5,777 nt of DNA, from NCBI GenBank assembly GCA_001179505.1, contig CDMY01001029.1:1-5777 (forward strand), in the 5' to 3' direction. This document shows positions 1 through 5,777 of the stretch, piece after piece. This DNA comes from Vitrella brassicaformis CCMP3155 (taxonomy: Eukaryota; Protista; Chromerida). Under the pieces are notes generated by a model. That model saw only the letters and a list, made by a program, of their open reading frames with translations, made no database searches and was not told the origin of the DNA. Numbering within the stretch: the stretch's first letter is position 1; every line of letters starts with the position of its first letter. Position numbers and translations under genes: made by a program.

Positions 1-220
1 CGACGAATGGCGGCATTGTTCGTTTCTGAGAGAGGTGAGGCGACCCGCACGTCGGTAGGGAGCTCGCGATGAGGTGGGCGTGATGGTGGCGCTTGCGGAG
101 CCCACCACAGACAACGTGAGGAGAAATTCTCCTCACATCGTGATTTGCGAGCTCTTGGTAAGTTTCGTCAGCAGCTACAGTAGATGCCAAAACGCGGCGC
201 TCTGAGATCTGCTCGAGAAA

Positions 221-810
221 TTGCTCGAGAGGCGAAAGCCGTTTACATCCGCGGAGGGAGCCATCGGCGGCGGGAAGAAGAACAACAAGAAGCGTGCCAC
301 TGTGCCCATGCCCGCCAATAACAAGTGCTGCATCGCTGCGACGTCACAGACGAACATCGGTGGATGCACCAGCGGCGTCCACACGCGTAACAAGGTCTCT
401 CATTCCTGCCACAAGCGGGTGTGCAAGATGCACAGCAGTGCGGTCGAGTACGATGGGTTCAACGAGGTGGTCCAGATCATCCTCAATGTGGCCAAACGCA
501 TGGGTATGCTGTCGGAGCACAACTTCATCTGCCTCAACTGCATCAGACTCGCACTCATTCAAGTGAGATGGAGGATGATCACATGGATGGATGAGCGGGC
601 GGGTATCTGTGGTGTGGTGTGGATGTGTGGTGTGTGGGTCAGGTGTTGAAGACCAGATGCGAGAACAACGCCGACAAGGGCCTCTGCGAGAAGTGCACCA
701 ACCAAGAGCTGGTGGCCCAGTACCACACCAACGTCAACAACACAGGAGTCAACAACAACGCCAACAACGCACGCGCCAACAATGCAGCGGCTGCCATGCA
801 ATTGGGCTGA
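221..810 (+). CDS. Gene A: spliced hypothetical Cys/His-rich zinc-finger protein with Asn/Ala-rich tail; exons <=308-562 and 643-810; true start unresolved
   Basis: Frame 221-562 joins frame 643-810 at phase 0 through GT(563)..AG(642), giving ...NFICLNCIRLALIQ|VLKTRCENNADKGLCEKCTNQ...NNAAAAMQLG*(TGA 808-810). Third positions are strongly G/C. First in-frame ATG is at 308. The frame is open back to a TGA at 203-205. A possible upstream exon is ATG83-157 with a GTAAGT donor at 158. Confidence 0.72.
563..642 (+). other. Spliceosomal intron of gene A (80 nt, phase 0)
   Basis: CAA|GTGAGA donor, TG/GGAT-rich low-complexity interior and GGGTCAG|GTG acceptor. Removal fuses two codon-biased frames. 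Confidence 0.8.
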
Positions 811-828
811 GCAGTTTGCGTGTAGCTT

Positions 829-858
829 GAGAGAGGAGAGAGAGGGAGAGGAGAGAGA
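829..858 (+). repeat. Imperfect (GA)n polypurine microsatellite just downstream of the gene A stop
   Basis: gagagaggagagagagggagaggagagaga read directly from the sequence. Confidence 0.85.
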
Positions 859-1050
859 AACGTTCGCACGGGGACACACACTGATCAAACAGGGACAGAG
901 GGGCAGGCACACATCACACAGGGGTCACACAGGGTTGCATTCACGTGGTTTTTGAAGTGTCATTTTTGATGTTTGTTGAATCCATCTGTGTATATGCCCG
1001 TGTACATAGTTTGTTTGTTTCGTCGCATACATACGTGTCAACTGTGTATA

Positions 1051-1109
1051 TACACACATAAACAGACGCCATGTATGTACACACATAAACAGACGCCATG
1101 CATATACAC
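1051..1109. repeat. 27-bp tandem duplication
   Basis: tacacacataaacagacgccatgtatg (1051-1077) is followed by tacacacataaacagacgccatgcata (1078-1104) and a partial third start, tacac. Confidence 0.9.
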
Positions 1110-1199
1110 CGGTGTACGCATTCCTCGTCTATACCTCAAAACTGACGGGAAAAAGTGACGCATTCGTGCTATGTACTGTACACACACGCATTCACACGG

Positions 1200-1268
1200 T
1201 CATCTACACACGCACACGCACATGCATGTGTCCTCACGCTCATCTACACACGCACACGCACATGCATG
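1200..1268. repeat. 40-bp-period tandem duplication, CA/CG alternating
   Basis: tcatctacacacgcacacgcacatgcatg occurs at 1200 and 1240. Confidence 0.9.
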
Positions 1269-1426
1269 CGTCAACTGACACACCAACTACGTCTACGCGG
1301 CTCGATACACCCACCGCACACACATGCCCTCGTTTATTACTGGTTGTTTAGGTCGATATGGTTGTTGGTGTTGGTGCTGGGCGGGGGCATGGGTGGGAAG
1401 ATGTCCGCCATGGTGAGGCGACGGCG

Positions 1427-1555
1427 GCAGAAAGGGCAACCTTTGCGGCGGTTGTTGAAGCGGGTGTTCCACGCACAGCTACGGCACAGCTGGTGCTTGC
1501 AGCACGATGTGGTCACGACGACGTCCTGTGGGTGGCTGTCTGTGCAGATCGGACA
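1427..1555 (-). other. C3HC4 RING-finger coding segment of gene B
   Basis: CPIC-x14-C-K-H-QL-C-RS-C-x12-CPFC matches the canonical C-x2-C-x(9-39)-C-x(1-3)-H-x(2-3)-C-x2-C-x(4-48)-C-x2-C RING spacing. Confidence 0.88.
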
Positions 1556-1599
1556 CTCGACCTGCGCGTTGTTGGATGCGGGTGTGTTGCTGGGTGCGG

Positions 1600-1700
1600 G
1601 CGTGTTGGTGCTGCTGGGTGCGAGCGTGTTGGTGAGGGCGGGTACGGCGTGTTGGTGAGGGCGGGTACGGGAGTGTTGGTGAGGGCGGGCGTGTTGGTGA
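1600..1700 (-). repeat. Coding tandem repeat (PALTNT[PV] / PAPSxT; 18-24 nt units) in gene B, containing a 1-nt deletion
   Basis: On the + strand gtgttggtgagggcggg recurs 3 times (1626, 1649, 1673). One unit has gggtacgggagtg and the next has gggtacggcgtg, 1 nt shorter, which shifts the frame. Confidence 0.85.
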
Positions 1701-1757
1701 TGCTGGTGGTGCCGTCCGTCAGCATCCTGCCCGTGTCAGCATCCATCATCGACACAT

Positions 1758-1821
1758 CTGATCACATACACAAGAAGCAGTGATGAGTCCGTGTGCGTCC
1801 GTGTGTGTGCATCGTGCTGAC
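1758..1821 (-). other. Gene B intron 3 (64 nt, phase 1)
   Basis: Minus strand G|GTCAGC donor, CA-rich interior and TGTGATCAG acceptor. An alternative acceptor at 1727 cannot be excluded. Confidence 0.6.
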
Positions 1822-1916
1822 CATCCAGTACATGCTCGCGGACGCTCTCTTCGTAGGGGGAGAAATGGCACACGCCCTTCTCGTAATATATTCTCGCACC
1901 AACGCACGTACAGGAA

Positions 1917-1975
1917 CTGAAACACAACACACATGCAGTGCAGGGAGAGATAGATGTCTGTGCTGTCCTTCTTAC
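1917..1975 (-). other. Gene B intron 2 (59 nt, phase 0)
   Basis: Minus strand GCC|GTAAGA donor and TGTGTGTTGTGTTTCAG acceptor. It sits at the same protein position as the gene A intron. Confidence 0.75.
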
Positions 1976-2095
1976 GGCTTCGATGTGGTCGAATCCGCAC
2001 ACGAAACACGTGAAGTTGCCCGTCTGCCCGTGCAGGTTGCGAATGCGGGTAAGGAACTCTTTCGTGATGTCACACGGACCAGCAGGAACGTACGA

Positions 2096-2172
2096 CTGAA
2101 ACGCTTGAGCACACACAGACATCCACACATCACAATATACACAGGTATGCATCGCGTCCTCTTGCTTCTGAC
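2096..2172 (-). other. Gene B intron 1 (77 nt, phase 0)
   Basis: Minus strand AAG|GTCAGA donor, TG-rich interior and TTTCAG acceptor. Removal joins ORF 1972-2379 to ORF 1736-2272 in frame. Confidence 0.72.
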
Positions 2173-2519
2173 CTTGTGGTCTCTGTGCTGACCGCAGAAC
2201 ACCTCCCCGCAGTACTTGCACCAACGCACCTTGCCTTCCTGCACCTCTTTGCCGCACCCAAACCACCCACACACCCGCGGCTCCTTCTTGCCCGTCCAGA
2301 AGTTGACGGTCTGCTCAGGCTTGGCCGAAAACCGCGTCTTGAGCTCCTCCAGCCCCTTGAGGATGATGTCGCTGAGCACCTTCTCCTTGAGGATCGTGAA
2401 TGTGAGGGGTCAGATGCGGGGAAGGTCGAAACGAAGGTGCTTGAAGGCCTCGATGGTCAGGGTGCGGTTGTCGAGCTTGGCAAAGAGCTTGGCCGTCTGC
2501 CATGGGTCTGTGGTGGTGA

Positions 2520-2576
2520 CTGAAAGCATTGGTGCGATGAATGAATGGAAACCACATCAGCTTGTTTTACGCTTAC
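2520..2576 (-). other. Probable upstream intron of gene B (acceptor at 2520; candidate donor at 2576, 57 nt)
   Basis: Minus strand TTCATTCATCGCACCAATGCTTTCAG acceptor directly before the codon-biased frame, with G|GTAAGC 57 nt upstream. The upstream exon is not identifiable. Confidence 0.5.
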
Positions 2577-2598
2577 CCTACCCTGCGCACGTGCATGC

Positions 2599-2919
2599 GC
2601 AGGGGTGCGCACGCAGACATTCATGATATACACACACTCCAAGTCCACCCGCAGGTGTGCGCACAGAGACATTCATCATATGCACGCACTCCAAGTCCAC
2701 ATGCGCAGGGGTGCGCACAGAGACATTCATAATATCCACACACTTTACACACTTCAAGTCCACCCGCAGGTGTGCGCACAGAGACATTCATCATATACAC
2801 GCACTCCAAGTCCACACGTGCATGGGCAGGTGTGCGCACACAGACATTCACCTATACACACACTCCAAATCCACCCGCAGGTGTGTGCACAGAGACATTC
2901 ATCATATACACGCACTCCA
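2599..2919. repeat. Minisatellite, 6 degenerate units (starts 2599, 2651, 2705, 2766, 2826, 2877; lengths 52, 54, 61, 60, 51, 43 partial)
   Basis: Consensus gcaggtgtgcgcacagagacattcatcatatacacgcactccaagtccac(cc), aligned by eye. Length variation is mostly in the unit tail. Confidence 0.93.
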
Positions 2920-3220
2920 TATACTCGAATTTCAACATGCCCCCAATGATTGAGTCGGTTATTTCTCGGCTGTTTCTCCTCCTTTTCGGATGAGGGAGCG
3001 TGTATCGGACTACACCCAACCCCCCCCAGCGACCCTCATCCCGCGATACGGCGGCGGGCCCCCCTGTTGCGCATGCAACGCGAAAGGGACGTCTGCGCTG
3101 TCCACATGCAGCCGAAAGTGTGACTGCCGGAAGCACAAGCGCCTCTGCACTAACTGTGTCAACTGCAAGCGCGGCACGTGCACAAATTTCACGTAGCCCG
3201 CGGACCCGGCCGTTTGCCAT

Positions 3221-3234
3221 GATGATGATGATGA
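3221..3234 (+). repeat. (GAT)n microsatellite encoding poly-Asp in the retroelement N-terminal linker
   Basis: cat gat gat gat gat gaa = HDDDDE in the frame of ATG 2990, after the TAG at 3194. Confidence 0.75.
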
Positions 3235-4815
3235 ATCGGATGCCGTCTCCGCCTCTGCTAGCCCGTCGTGCCCTCCACGGCTTCCTTTGTCGATGAGAAG
3301 ATGCGCGAGGCCTTCGGCGAGCCCCTCGTCAACTCCGCCAGTGGATCGACTTTCCCTGAGTGGGAGGCATATCACGACCGGGTCTGCCAGCTTCGACTGC
3401 GGTGCGTGAAGGATCTCAGCAAGCTTGGCAACCTTAGCCGCGCCATCGCCGAGGCCATCGCTGATGAGGTGGAGAAGATCTCCAAGCTCGAGGCACCGTC
3501 CGAGCGGGTTGGCGTCTTCGTCCGCACACTCATCCAGCGAGATCCGGATGTCAAGAGGAAGCGCGATGTCAAGCGGATGCTCTGGAGGCGGCTGGAGATG
3601 TGGCAGAATGGGCAGGTGGAGGAGCTCGTGTGCGAGGCGGAGCGATTGGACCAGCAGTTCCTCACCACTCAGCCTCAGCTGGACGACGCGTCGGTCTATC
3701 GCATCTTCAACAAGCTCATGCTCGAGGGCAAGGTCCGCGCGGCCGTCCGCTTCGTCACCGAGAGGGGCGGCGAGGGGATACTCCACCCATCCGCTCAGGC
3801 CGACAGGCGCCCCCCGGGGGTCACGGTGCTCGATGTCCTTCGCAAGAAGCACCCACCACAGCAGCAGCCGTACGAGGAAGCCTTCCTTCCGTGTGACGAC
3901 CTTCCTCCCCTCATTGACGTGGACATCACGGACTCGACCGTGGAGCGAGCGGCATGGTGCCTCAGTGGCAGCGCCGGATCGACCGGTGGCGATGCGAACT
4001 TCTGGCAGACCTTCCTCCTTCGATACGGTGCCAAGAGCGGCCGCCTCCGCGCGGCTGTGGCCTCGCTCGTCTCTATCCTGGCCAACACCATCGTCTCATA
4101 GGACACCATCAAGGCCCTGCAAGCGTGCCACCTCATCGCTCTCGACAAATGCCCGGGCGTCCGCCCCATCGGCGTCGGGGAGGTGCTCTCTCGGCTGGCT
4201 GGCAAGTGCATGGCCATGGTGACCCGCTCTGACCTGGAGACGACCTGCGGCACTGATCAGCTGTGCATCGGTGTGAAGGGGGGCCTCGAGGGGGCTGTGC
4301 ACATGGTGAATGACCTCTTCCAAGAGGACGAGACCGAGGGGCTCCTGCTGGTGGACGCGAGCAACACCTTCCATCGCACCAGTCGGCCTGCTGCCATCTG
4401 GAACACCCGCGTGCTGTGGCCTCGCTGCTCTCGCTATGTGTTCAACACCTACCGAGGGTTCGCCGCACTTCACCTGCAAGGCTCAGCCGGCTGTCTGTGG
4501 AGCTGTGAAGGCGTCACACAGGGCGATTCGATGGCGATGTTCGTCTACGCCTGCGGCAGCCTTCCCCTCATCCATGCCCTGCGGGCTGCCTGCGCTGAGG
4601 AGGGATATGAGATGCCGTCGAGTGGGGTATGAGATGAGTTAGGCAGCAATGGGTCTGGGTCAGACACGGACGAGAACGAAAATGCGCCATCAGAAGCGCA
4701 AGAGAAGCCAGAAGAAGCTAGTGACACGCCACCAGAAGCAGAGGGGGATGGTGCGGGTGTATGTGTGCGTTCTGATGTAGAAGGTGTTGGAGTTGGTGAG
4801 GAGAAGAGAGAGAGT

Positions 4816-4842
4816 TCGTCGGCCTCGTCGGCCTCGTCGGCC
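4816..4842 (+). repeat. 9-bp tandem repeat (tcgtcggcc)x3 encoding SSA x3 within the RT insertion
   Basis: tcgtcggcc tcgtcggcc tcgtcggcc read directly from the sequence. Confidence 0.85.
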
Positions 4843-5777
4843 TCTTCATCTAGCGCTTCGCTGCGGCAGTGCTGGTATGCAGATGACTTATCGGCGCTCG
4901 GCAAACTTCACGGCATACTCGTGTGGTTTCGAGCCCTGCGTCGAATCGGTCCCTCATACGGCTATCACCCGGAGGCCGCCAAGTCCTTCCTCATCGTCAA
5001 ACCCGAGCTCGAGCAGATCGCAAGGGAGCTCTTCGAGCTCGAGGCGAAGAGCTCGAGGGGGTGCAGATCGTCACGGGCAAGAGGTTCCTGGGCGGCTACG
5101 TGGGCGATGAGGGGGGGAGGGCGGCGTTCCTCGGCGAGAAGGTCGAGAGGTGGGTACATGGCGTGCGCGCGCTTGCGTCTGCTACCCGCAACTTCTCGCA
5201 CACGGCCCACGCGGCAATGACGAGGTCTCTGCAGATGGAGTGGGACTACGTCTTTCATGTCTTGCTCGCCGACGAGTGCGCTCTCAGCCCCCTCTGCGAG
5301 GCCATCGCCAAGCAGCTGCTGCCGGCCCTCCTCGGCGGCCCTGTGATGCCGTCCGAAATAGAGCTGATGCTGCTGCCTGCCCGCTTTGGCGGCACCGACA
5401 TACGTGACCCTCTCGACCGTGCCGCAGCCGCCTACCCCGCTTCCCGCGCGAGCACCAAGGTGGTCTCCAAGTCCGTCCAAGGCAAGGCTCCCTTCCACCC
5501 TGGCGACCATCGTGCCACCATCCGCCACGCCCTCACCAAGAGCAAGCAGCAGCAGGACGTCGCCCACAAAACCATGAGGGAGGCCGCCCTGCCGCACATC
5601 GACCGCCGGCGCCATCGCGTCCTCTCCCACACCGCCAAATACAAGACGTCCGGCTGGCTGACCATCCTCCCGTCGACAGACAACAACACTGGTCTTGATG
5701 CTGCGGAGTTTCGAGATGCCCTCAACATGCGATACGGCCGTCACCCCCCTGGCCTCGCTGCACGCTGCGATCACTGC

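What the first reader, a model, noticed from the sequence alone, without database searches (positions are those of the whole stretch)
326..2271. The two convergent genes are hidden paralogues of an unrecognised Cys/His zinc-finger family, with a shared intron position
Seen after manual splicing. Gene A: GC-TSGVHTRNKV-SHS-C-HKRV-C-KM-H-x32(..HNFI)-CLNC-IRLALIQ|VLKTR-CENNADKGLC-EKC. Gene B: GC-GKEVQEGKVRW-CKY-C-GEVF-C-GQ-H-x33(..GNFT)-CFVC-GFDHIEA|FLYVRW-CENYYEKGVC-HFS. Shared features are C-x4-C-x2-H, an NFxCxxC 32-33 residues later, a phase-0 intron exactly 7 codons after that CxxC, and CENxx[DE]KGxC. The match mutually validates both splice models and the 1-nt frameshift correction in B. Known: the first half resembles the cross-brace/treble-clef spacing of FYVE, AN1 and piggyBac Cys-rich domains. 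The long spacer and the CENxx[DE]KGxC extension match no family I can name. Inference: an old, lineage-specific zinc-binding domain family in a tail-to-tail cluster, with one member fused to a RING.
Basis: partly seen in the sequence, partly recalled or inferred. Interest (0 to 1): 0.75.

Follow-up and report, generated by a model that had tools for sequence, protein, structure and literature searches.

The report
Diverged AN1/FYVE-like zinc-finger paralogues; one pseudogene
The two convergent genes are real, distant paralogues from a zinc-finger family found only in the alga Vitrella brassicaformis, but the finger is a stretched variant of the known AN1/FYVE type, the RING-bearing copy here is a transcribed pseudogene, and the family sits oddly often beside relics of Polinton-like viruses.

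Summary
The window is contig C1029 of Vitrella brassicaformis CCMP3155.

Confirmed:
- A cDNA-type public contig confirms the splice junctions 562/643 (gene A) and 1976/1916 (gene B).
- Paralogy of A and B is supported. BLASTP of intact relatives gives 8e-4 over 138 collinear residues, hhalign gives P=5e-5, and HMM hits run both ways at 21-24 bits against at most 9.6 for shuffles.
- The phase-0 intron lies 7 codons after the CxxC in both families.

Corrected:
- CENxx[DE]KGxC is not a family motif. Only an Asn at +9 and a Cys at +15 after the intron are shared.
- The finger is AN1-like in its first six ligands, with a sub-threshold Pfam hit. It closes with a distal CxxC, as FYVE fingers do, after a 32-38-residue insert.
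- B-type proteins begin with a decayed polyubiquitin relic, so they probably derive from a ubiquitin-AN1 fusion that also carries a RING.
- Window gene B is a transcribed pseudogene. It has an in-frame TGA, a splice acceptor shifted by 1 nt, an insertion in exon 3 and a -1 shift that cuts off the RING.
- Window gene A lacks the family's N-terminal 56 residues and one zinc ligand.

Unexpected: all six genomic loci of an A32-like viral packaging ATPase lie 0.45-3.3 kb upstream of an A/B gene.

The parts
308..562 (+). Gene A exon 1 (85 codons). It holds a divergent AN1/FYVE-like finger: Cys 326-331 and 365-367; Ser 398-400 in place of a family Cys; Cys 407-409 and 422-424; His 431-433; CxxC 530-541.
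   Evidence: The exon is covered by transcript contig L042 from 180 to 562. Homology to family protein P0001 starts at window 218, and an in-frame stop lies at 203-205.
563..642 (+). Gene A intron (80 nt, GT..AG, phase 0), 7 codons after the CxxC.
   Evidence: It is spliced out exactly in L042. The same position is used in the annotated paralogues P0001 and P0023, the latter with an MMETSP transcript.
643..810 (+). Gene A exon 2 (55 codons plus stop). It carries the family-conserved Asn 667-669 and Cys 685-687, followed by an Asn-rich tail.
2173..2529 (-). Gene B exon 1. ATG is at 2529, then a decayed polyubiquitin relic, an in-frame TGA at 2412-2410, and the AN1-like finger at 2271-2185.
   Evidence: The exon is present unchanged in RNA contig L042.
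2104..2172 (-). Gene B intron 1 as used in RNA (69 nt). The ancestral acceptor AG has become AA, so splicing moved 1 nt and exon 2 starts at 2103.
   Evidence: The comparison with C866 comes from the flanks printed and the sequence.
1976..2103 (-). Gene B exon 2. In the ancestral frame (2095-1976) it encodes the helical insert and NFTCFVC. In the real mRNA it is read out of frame.
   Evidence: (P0004).
1917..1975 (-). Gene B intron 2 (59 nt, GT..AG). It is phase 0 in the ancestral frame and lies 7 codons after the CxxC, the position shared with the A family.
   Evidence: The position matches the annotated junction GKS|FQY of P0002.
1822..1916 (-). Gene B exon 3. WCEN is followed by an insertion near 1889-1886 (+1 or +4 nt relative to C866), then YEKGVC..PYEESVREHVLD.
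1758..1821 (-). Gene B intron 3 (64 nt, phase 1).
1337..1757 (-). Gene B last exon. A Thr/Asn/Pro repeat linker has a -1 frameshift near 1645. The C3HC4 RING at 1555-1427 is out of frame with the mRNA ORF, which stops at 1515-1513. The ancestral stop is at 1339-1337.

Best explanation
Genes A and B are diverged members of one zinc-finger superfamily found only in Vitrella.

The shared domain has this layout: C-x4-C, 10-11 residues, C-x2-C, 4 residues, C-x2-H, a 32-38-residue mostly helical insert, C-x2-C, 7 residues, a phase-0 intron, Asn at +9 and Cys at +15. I read it as a binuclear cross-brace (treble-clef) finger. Ligands 1, 2, 5 and 6 would hold one zinc, and ligands 3 and 4 plus the distal CxxC would hold the other. 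It would then be AN1-like in its first six ligands and closed in the FYVE manner. The ligand assignment is inferred, not shown.

The B lineage has one intact copy on C866, the 332-residue protein P0002. It consists of a decayed polyubiquitin relic, this finger, a low-complexity linker and a C-terminal C3HC4 RING. That makes it most likely an E3 ubiquitin ligase descended from a ubiquitin-AN1 fusion gene.

The A lineage has at least 8 loci, of which only 2-3 are intact. It encodes small proteins made of a lineage-specific N-terminal region, a Lys-rich linker and the finger.

In this window:
- B is a transcribed but crippled pseudogene.
- A is an expressed, correctly spliced copy that lacks the family's N-terminal region and has lost one ligand Cys.
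For: Identity of the genome and proteins.

Family census and lesions.

Same ligand pattern in both families.

Homology statistics:
- BLASTP of P0001 against P0002 gives 8e-4 over 138 collinear residues.
- hhalign of the exon 1 parts gives P=1.8e-4, and of exon 2 P=0.013.
- hhalign of the whole domains gives P=5e-5 over 101 columns.
- The B-domain HMM scores an A copy at 24.3 bits, against a maximum of 9.6 bits in 2000 shuffles.
- The A-family HMM scores P0002 at 21.1 bits.

Intron position.

AN1 likeness:
- Pfam zf-AN1 E=2.9e-4 to 9.8e-4, covering profile positions 1-29 of 40.
- A weak ESM Atlas lead to AN1 clusters.
- The Phe before ligand 5 and the C6H2 cross-brace described in PMC5035049.

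Polyubiquitin relic and ubiquitin-AN1 fusion precedent.

RING.

RNA evidence.
Against: - The two AlphaFold models were poor (mean pLDDT 59 and 40). Fold searches gave nothing usable. Neither the cross-brace nor the role of the distal CxxC is therefore shown structurally.
- The AN1 hit is below Pfam's gathering score and covers only six of eight ligands. A-family members alone score nothing in Pfam or against PDB sequences.
- hhalign probability is only 48-68%, because both profiles are shallow.
- hhalign places two compensating 2-residue gaps around the intron. The exact coincidence of intron position therefore rests on the ungapped alignment.
Confidence: 0.72

Rival explanations
1. The A/B resemblance is convergence or chance between two unrelated Cys-rich fingers, and the intron coincidence is an accident.
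For: Pairwise identity is only about 21%. hhalign probabilities are 48-68%. The most eye-catching motif, CENxx[DE]KGxC, turned out not to be conserved.
Against: HMM hits run both ways and lie well above composition-matched shuffles. The match is collinear over about 100 residues. The distance from the CxxC to the last conserved Cys is the same (22 residues) in both families. The intron position and phase are the same in all copies of both families.
Confidence: 0.1
2. A and B are not ordinary host genes. They are the terminal, fast-evolving module of endogenous Polinton-like virus elements, or were captured by such elements, and they spread and decay together with them.
For: - All 6 A32-like ATPase loci in the genome lie 0.45-3.3 kb upstream of an A/B gene.
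- AT-rich DNA (about 32% GC) carries Pox_A32, rve integrase, protein-primed PolB, a RING ORF and an S74 fibre-chaperone domain.
- C504 (A) and C866 (B) show the same gene order and orientation next to ATPases that are 72-75% identical.
- Most A copies are decayed.
- AN1 clusters rich in giant-virus proteins appear among the ESM leads.
Against: - A/B genes have host-like GC content and spliceosomal introns.
- No A/B-like ORF occurs in the AT-rich parts.
- The virus parts and the adjacent A/B genes have incongruent relationships. For C484 against C742, the AT-rich DNA is 90% identical while the only DNA match between their A genes is 69% over 162 nt.
- C1018, which is intact and expressed, and the window copies have no AT-rich DNA nearby.
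- No terminal repeat encloses an A gene.
Confidence: 0.25
3. A/B are host genes whose upstream region is a preferred integration site for two lineages of Polinton-like viruses.
For: - The same linkage data apply.
- Closely related virus ends abut very different A/B genes.
- The virus is always on the 5' side.
- An A-family-specific 18-nt upstream motif is found only at A copies at 0-1 mismatch.
Against: - No target-site duplication or att-like sequence was identified.
- B upstream regions share no detectable similarity with A upstream regions.
- The two ATPase lineages sit in different orientations relative to the gene.
Confidence: 0.3

Closest known systems
AN1-type zinc finger (Pfam PF01428; ZFAND proteins, yeast Cuz1, PDB 5IJ4)
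   Same: - The first six ligands have AN1 spacing: C-x4-C-x11-C-x2-C-x4-C-x2-H.
- In B, a Phe precedes ligand 5 and 'HR' follows.
- It is a binuclear treble-clef type.
- It is linked to ubiquitin-like sequence, as in the founding Xenopus An1 proteins (cited in PMC5035049) and in the Rhizopus polyubiquitin-AN1 protein P0018.
   Different: - The closing H-x5-H-x-C is missing.
- Instead there is a 32-38-residue insert followed by a distal CxxC.
- The Pfam score (19.6-21.3 bits) is below the gathering score of 27.9.
- A-family members have Val in place of the Phe and score nothing.
FYVE finger (Pfam PF01363)
   Same: - It has an eight-ligand cross-brace layout with a distal CxxC that is followed by a helix.
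- The B finger hits the FYVE repeats of a Peranema protein (P0022). Those repeats also read C-x4-C-x11-C-x2-C-x4-C-x2-H.
   Different: - Pfam FYVE E-values are only 0.08-0.56.
- The WxxD, RRHHCR and RVC signature motifs are absent by eye, so phosphoinositide binding is not expected.
- From my memory of FYVE fingers, the spacer before the last CxxC is about twice as long here.
piggyBac C-terminal Cys-rich domain (PF13842)
   Same: It is a cross-brace Cys/His finger. ESM Atlas feature hits at 0.90 point to clusters that carry PF13842 or PF13843.
   Different: There is no Pfam hit. The genome shows no piggyBac transposase (though that search's control was also silent). A score of 0.90 is within the range of chance hits.
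C-terminal RING E3 ligases with an upstream FYVE-like finger (e.g. RNF34/CARP)
   Same: The intact B protein has a cross-brace finger followed by a linker and a C-terminal C3HC4 RING. The best Pfam match for the RING is zf-C3HC4_3.
   Different: There is no sequence relationship outside the RING. The resemblance is in architecture only, recalled from memory plus a low-TM Atlas row.

Membership tests
AN1 zinc finger (PF01428) | Score at or above Pfam's gathering cut-off (27.9 bits) | tested here: not met
   B scores 19.6-21.3 bits, E=2.9e-4 to 9.8e-4, over profile positions 1-29 of 40. A scores at most 7.7 bits.
AN1 zinc finger (PF01428) | Ligands 1-6 with the spacing C-x2/4-C-x9-12-C-x1-2-C-x4-C-x2-H | tested here: met
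   B reads C-x4-C-x11-C-x2-C-x4-C-x2-H. The A consensus reads C-x4-C-x10/11-C-x2-C-x4-C-x2-H. The window A copy has Ser at ligand 3.
AN1 zinc finger (PF01428) | Closing ligands H-x5-H-x-C (C6H2) | tested here: not met
   B has H-x2-H followed by an intron. A has no conserved His or Cys there.
AN1 zinc finger (PF01428) | Conserved Phe just before the penultimate zinc-binding Cys (PMC5035049) | tested here: inconclusive
   The Phe is present in both B copies (VFC). It is Val in all A copies.
FYVE finger (PF01363) | Pfam gathering score, and the WxxD / RRHHCR / RVC motifs | tested here: not met
   E=0.08-0.56 and at most 13.5 bits. The motifs are absent from the alignments.
FYVE finger (PF01363) | Eight ligands in a cross-brace, with the last pair a distal CxxC | not testable with these tools
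   The pattern is present in the sequence, but the models were too poor to check the geometry.
RING finger C3HC4 (B lineage) | C3HC4 pattern and a Pfam RING match | tested here: met
   For window 1555-1427: zf-C3HC4 scores 21.4 bits against a cut-off of 21, and zf-C3HC4_3 26.8 against 27. P0002 matches the TRIM21 RING in PDB sequences at E=4.6e-5. In the window copy the RING is out of frame with the mRNA ORF.
Ubiquitin-like domain (B N-terminus) | A complete beta-grasp ubiquitin fold (about 76 residues) | tested here: not met
   Only the tail of one ubiquitin unit plus residues about 1-48 of the next are recognisable. Pfam ubiquitin is not hit. It is a relic, not a domain.
Polinton-like virus relics next to the A/B genes | A32-type packaging ATPase, rve integrase and protein-primed PolB in AT-rich, intron-less DNA | tested here: met
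   Pox_A32 scores 30.9 and 38.9 bits (cut-off 22.8), rve 43 bits (32.6), and DNA_pol_B_2 50.8 bits (25.8). GC is about 0.30-0.35. No capsid protein was identified by Pfam.

The most novel reading that the evidence does not exclude
The A/B zinc-finger genes and Polinton-like virus relics form an obligate pair in the Vitrella genome. Every detectable A32-like packaging ATPase locus (6 of 6) abuts the 5' side of an A/B gene, across two virus lineages whose ATPases are only 35% identical. Either the finger genes mark a dedicated viral integration site, or they are an intron-bearing, host-like terminal module of the endogenous viruses. In the second case they might act as an E3-ligase or ubiquitin-pathway accessory gene.
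Probability: 0.45. Interest if true: 0.7.

Novelty: new variant of a known kind. Interest (0 to 1): 0.45.

Why it matters
- It adds a lineage-specific variant to the binuclear treble-clef fingers: AN1-like in sequence, closed in the FYVE manner, with a doubled spacer.
- It shows a clear route of origin for one branch: a polyubiquitin-AN1 fusion that lost its ubiquitin function and now carries a C-terminal RING.
- It corrects a public gene call. P0004, an ORF called on the transcript contig, is the product of compensating frameshifts in a pseudogene.
- The tight linkage of this family to endogenous Polinton-like viruses, if it reflects integration targeting or a viral accessory module, would be a useful handle on how such viruses settle in alveolate genomes.

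Tried and rejected
- AlphaFold2 of P0001 with a 12-row family alignment gave pLDDT 59. AlphaFold2 of P0002 with a 5-row alignment gave pLDDT 40. Both are too poor to use.
- Foldseek against PDB and a VIA-align wide search with the P0001 model gave nothing above noise: E of at least 3.9 and Z of at most 4.7.
- The A-family profile found nothing against PDB sequences.
- I asked whether the conserved N-terminal region of the A family is a ubiquitin-like relic, as in B. hhalign against ubiquitin gave P=0.84, so I rejected this.
- The piggyBac lead from the ESM Atlas had no transposase or Pfam support.
- The weak A-like fragment on C309 (27 residues, E=0.008) has no finger upstream and was left as a possible relic.
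- A MAFFT alignment of the window B exon fragments to P0002 (A6) was misaligned. I replaced it with mafft --addfragments.
- A search for terminal inverted repeats enclosing an A gene found none.
- The window's spliced models were never joined into one sequence. All searches used single exons by reference, or the natural database proteins P0001, P0002, P0004 and P0023.
Full report
**Source.** The window is contig C1029 of a 72.7-Mb, 1064-contig assembly. Proteins encoded by paralogous loci are deposited as Vitrella brassicaformis CCMP3155. The DNA is eukaryotic, with short GT..AG introns.

Gene A lies on the + strand:
- Exon 1 is 308-562, the intron is 563-642 and exon 2 is 643-810.
- C-x4-C-x2-H is followed after 32 residues by a CxxC.
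- A phase-0 intron follows 7 codons after that CxxC.

Gene B lies on the - strand:
- It has a C-x4-C-x11-C-x2-C-x4-C-x2-H finger at 2271-2185.
- Intron 1 begins after 2173, the end of exon 1.
- NFTCFVC is followed by 7 codons and then a phase-0 intron (1975-1917).
- WCEN is followed by a frame change and then YYEKGVC.
- A Thr/Asn/Pro repeat linker leads to a C3HC4 RING at 1555-1427. Pfam RING families score E=4e-6 to 2e-4.

**RNA evidence.** The word search and the representative search returned P0004. This is a 224-residue ORF called on a 2096-nt JGI contig (sample 3300017297, Ga0186270_103991). That contig matches the window exactly in five blocks: 2547-2173, 2103-1976, 1916-1822, 1757-643 and 562-180. 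It therefore lacks all four introns and derives from spliced RNA. The convergent A and B transcripts were merged into one contig through their 3' ends.

This gives four results:
- Junction 562/643 of gene A is confirmed.
- Junction 1976/1916 of gene B is confirmed.
- A third B intron lies at 1821-1758.
- B intron 1 ends at 2104, not at 2096.

The intact paralogue on C866 has ..CAG|GCG.. at the corresponding acceptor, where the window has ..CAAG|CG... The old acceptor AG has become AA and splicing has slid by one base. Exon 2 is therefore read out of frame in the mRNA.

Two further lesions are also present in the RNA:
- An in-frame TGA at 2412-2410 lies inside the conserved N-terminal region, with no ATG after it.
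- A -1 shift near 1645 in the repeat linker ends the ORF at 1515-1513, ahead of the RING.

Gene B in this window is thus a transcribed pseudogene.

**Families in the genome.** Exon-by-exon searches of the genome found these loci:

| Lineage | Contig | State |
|---|---|---|
| A | C484 | intact; P0001, 216 aa |
| A | C1018 | intact; P0023, 206 aa, also an MMETSP transcript |
| A | window (C1029) | ORF open, but truncated (see below) |
| A | C182 | two stops |
| A | C504 | internal deletion |
| A | C742 | frameshift |
| A | C922 | frameshift, also seen in an independent JGI contig (P0024) |
| A | C323 | broken, next to an assembly gap |
| B | window (C1029) | transcribed pseudogene |
| B | C866 | intact; P0002, 332 aa, annotated 'RING-type domain-containing protein' |

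P0001 and P0023 have exactly the exon structure predicted from the DNA.

The window A copy is atypical in four ways:
- Homology to P0001 starts only at residue 57, with an in-frame stop at 203-205.
- It lacks the 18-nt upstream motif that is otherwise specific to A copies.
- It has a 7-residue insert between ligands 1 and 2.
- It has Ser where the family has a ligand Cys.

**Are A and B related?** The A-family consensus, C-x4-C-x10/11-C-x2-C-x4-C-x2-H ... NFxCxxC, follows the B pattern. The statistics are:
- BLASTP of the two intact natural proteins P0001 and P0002 gives E=8e-4 over 138 collinear residues.
- hhalign of the A exon 1 alignment gives P=1.8e-4 against B exon 1 and P=0.013 against B exon 2.
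- hhalign of whole-domain alignments gives P=5e-5 over 101 columns. In these alignments each window B exon is kept as its own row.
- An HMM of the B domain hits A copies as its first non-B hits among 2689 ORF fragments. The best is 24.3 bits, E=2.7e-6, against a maximum of 9.6 bits for 2000 shuffles of the same sequence.
- The A-finger HMM hits P0002 at 21.1 bits.

I conclude that the paralogy claim is sound.

**Intron position.** All A copies have 7 codons between the CxxC and a phase-0 GT donor, and both B copies have the same. Counted from the intron, an Asn at +9 and a Cys at +15 are present in every member of both families. An ungapped alignment therefore makes the introns coincide exactly. 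hhalign instead places two compensating 2-residue gaps there. B has two introns in roughly 100 aligned codons. By my own estimate, an exact coincidence of codon and phase by chance would be of the order of 1%.

**The CEN motif.** In the A family the first Cys of CENNADKGLC is present in only 2 of 6 copies, and the 'EN' and 'KG' residues are peculiar to the window copy. The intact B protein reads WCNNYEERVC. As a family signature the motif fails. Only the Asn and the last Cys survive.

**What the domain is.**
- B exon 1 and P0002 give a reproducible but sub-threshold Pfam zf-AN1 match. The E-values are 2.9e-4 to 9.8e-4, over profile positions 1-29 of 40, with 19.6-21.3 bits against a cut-off of 27.9.
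- FYVE is weaker, at E=0.08-0.56.
- An exhaustive phmmer search of 1.84 billion representatives with B exon 1 found only P0002 and P0004 as true family members.
- Its other hits were polyubiquitins, a Rhizopus polyubiquitin fused to a canonical AN1 finger (P0018; Pfam AN1 E=8.6e-12), and a Peranema protein with five FYVE repeats (P0022). The P0022 repeats have the same C-x4-C ... C-x2-H variant.
- The alignments show that the B N-terminus retains the junction of two ubiquitin units plus the first ~48 residues of the second unit. The finger follows directly.

AN1 is a C6H2 binuclear treble-clef finger with a conserved Phe before the penultimate Cys. It was named after Xenopus ubiquitin-like fusion proteins (PMC5035049). 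B has that Phe and the first six ligands, but not the closing H-x5-H-x-C.

I infer that the distal CxxC after the 32-38-residue insert supplies the last two ligands, as in FYVE fingers. This step is not shown. Both structure predictions were of low confidence, and the fold searches were uninformative. Word-based profile searching with the A family found only Vitrella proteins.

**Function.**
- For the intact B-type protein, a RING E3 ligase with an AN1-like partner-binding finger is the most likely role. This is by analogy with ZFAND proteins, which work in the ubiquitin-proteasome system, and it is an inference.
- For A-type proteins only zinc binding can be proposed.
- The window copies themselves probably contribute little. 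B cannot make the domain or the RING, and A lacks a ligand and the N-terminal region.

**Surroundings.** Upstream of gene B lie a 52-nt tandem repeat (2598-2919) and a repeat that is also present on C504 (2957-3143, 93% identical). ORFs from that point to the end of the window look like a decayed retroelement by eye (a YADD-like motif), but Pfam did not confirm this.

**An unexpected linkage.** Several A/B loci have AT-rich DNA (about 32% GC) within about 1 kb of their 5' side:
- The A copies on C484, C742, C182, C504 and C922, and the B copy on C866, all show this.
- The AT-rich DNA encodes an A32-type packaging ATPase, rve integrase, protein-primed PolB, a RING ORF and a protein with an S74 fibre-chaperone domain. 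These are Polinton-like virus relics.

Searching the whole genome with both ATPase types found only six loci. All six lie 0.45-3.3 kb upstream of an A/B gene:
- The C866/C504 type lies in tandem with the gene.
- The C742/C484/C182/C323 type lies head-to-head with it.

C504 (A) and C866 (B) share the same upstream gene order, with 76% identical DNA that occurs nowhere else in the genome. The virus parts and the adjacent finger genes are not related in the same way. This argues against simple co-duplication. It leaves two readings: an integration target, or an exchangeable terminal module. Earlier notes of this scan also report Polinton-like relics and packaging-ATPase islands in this genome. 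I treated them as leads only.

**Limits.**
- No chromerid genome other than this one could be searched at the DNA level.
- Counts from the own-genome searches are lower bounds, as the tool states.

Noticed in passing
G000 contigs C866:12027-12713, C504:6631-7303, C484:48386-49045, C742:15636-16295, C182:130989-131726, C323:87447-88091: All six detectable loci of an A32-like viral packaging ATPase in the 72.7-Mb genome lie 0.45-3.3 kb upstream of an A- or B-family zinc-finger gene. There are two ATPase lineages, 35% identical, each with its own orientation relative to the gene.
   Followed up: partly
L037 (C922:1-3500), L027 (C504:1-7500), L033/L039 (C484:48000-67900), L038/L035 (C742:1-16500): AT-rich (about 30-35% GC), intron-less Polinton-like virus relics carry rve integrase, protein-primed PolB, a RING ORF, a protein with an S74 fibre-chaperone domain and candidate capsid ORFs. 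On C484 a unit of about 12 kb is bounded by 169-bp inverted repeats (55949-56117 and 67724-67892). The same repeat occurs at C922:54-225.
   Followed up: partly
window 2547-180 vs L042: One public transcript contig covers gene B in sense and gene A in antisense, with the introns of both removed. The 3' ends of the convergent transcripts therefore overlap, or were merged by the assembler.
   Followed up: partly
C182:132539, C323:91319, C742:17138, C922:4721, C504:7816, C1018:4486: An 18-nt motif, CTGCCAGTTTCGCTTGTC, lies 60-110 nt upstream of the ATG of six A copies. At 0-1 mismatch it occurs nowhere else in the genome. It is better conserved than the coding sequence and is absent from the window copy.
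   Followed up: partly
window 2598-2919: A tandem array of about 5.8 copies of a 52-nt unit (77% matches) lies between gene B and the downstream repeat.
   Followed up: no
window 2957-5777: This is a repeat whose 5' end is also on C504 (93% over 187 nt). It has long ORFs with an in-frame stop at 4099-4101, frame changes, a Cys-rich N-terminal ORF (2990-3196) and a YADD-like motif. It looks like a decayed retroelement, but no Pfam family was hit.
   Followed up: partly
window 184-321: A 45-codon upstream ORF starts at the first ATG of the transcribed region and overlaps the gene A start codon at 308 in another frame.
   Followed up: no
C309:82018-82098 (L024/L025): An isolated 27-residue stretch resembles the second half of the A domain (..FICLKC, then a GT donor). 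No finger lies upstream of it. It may be a relic of a further family member.
   Followed up: partly
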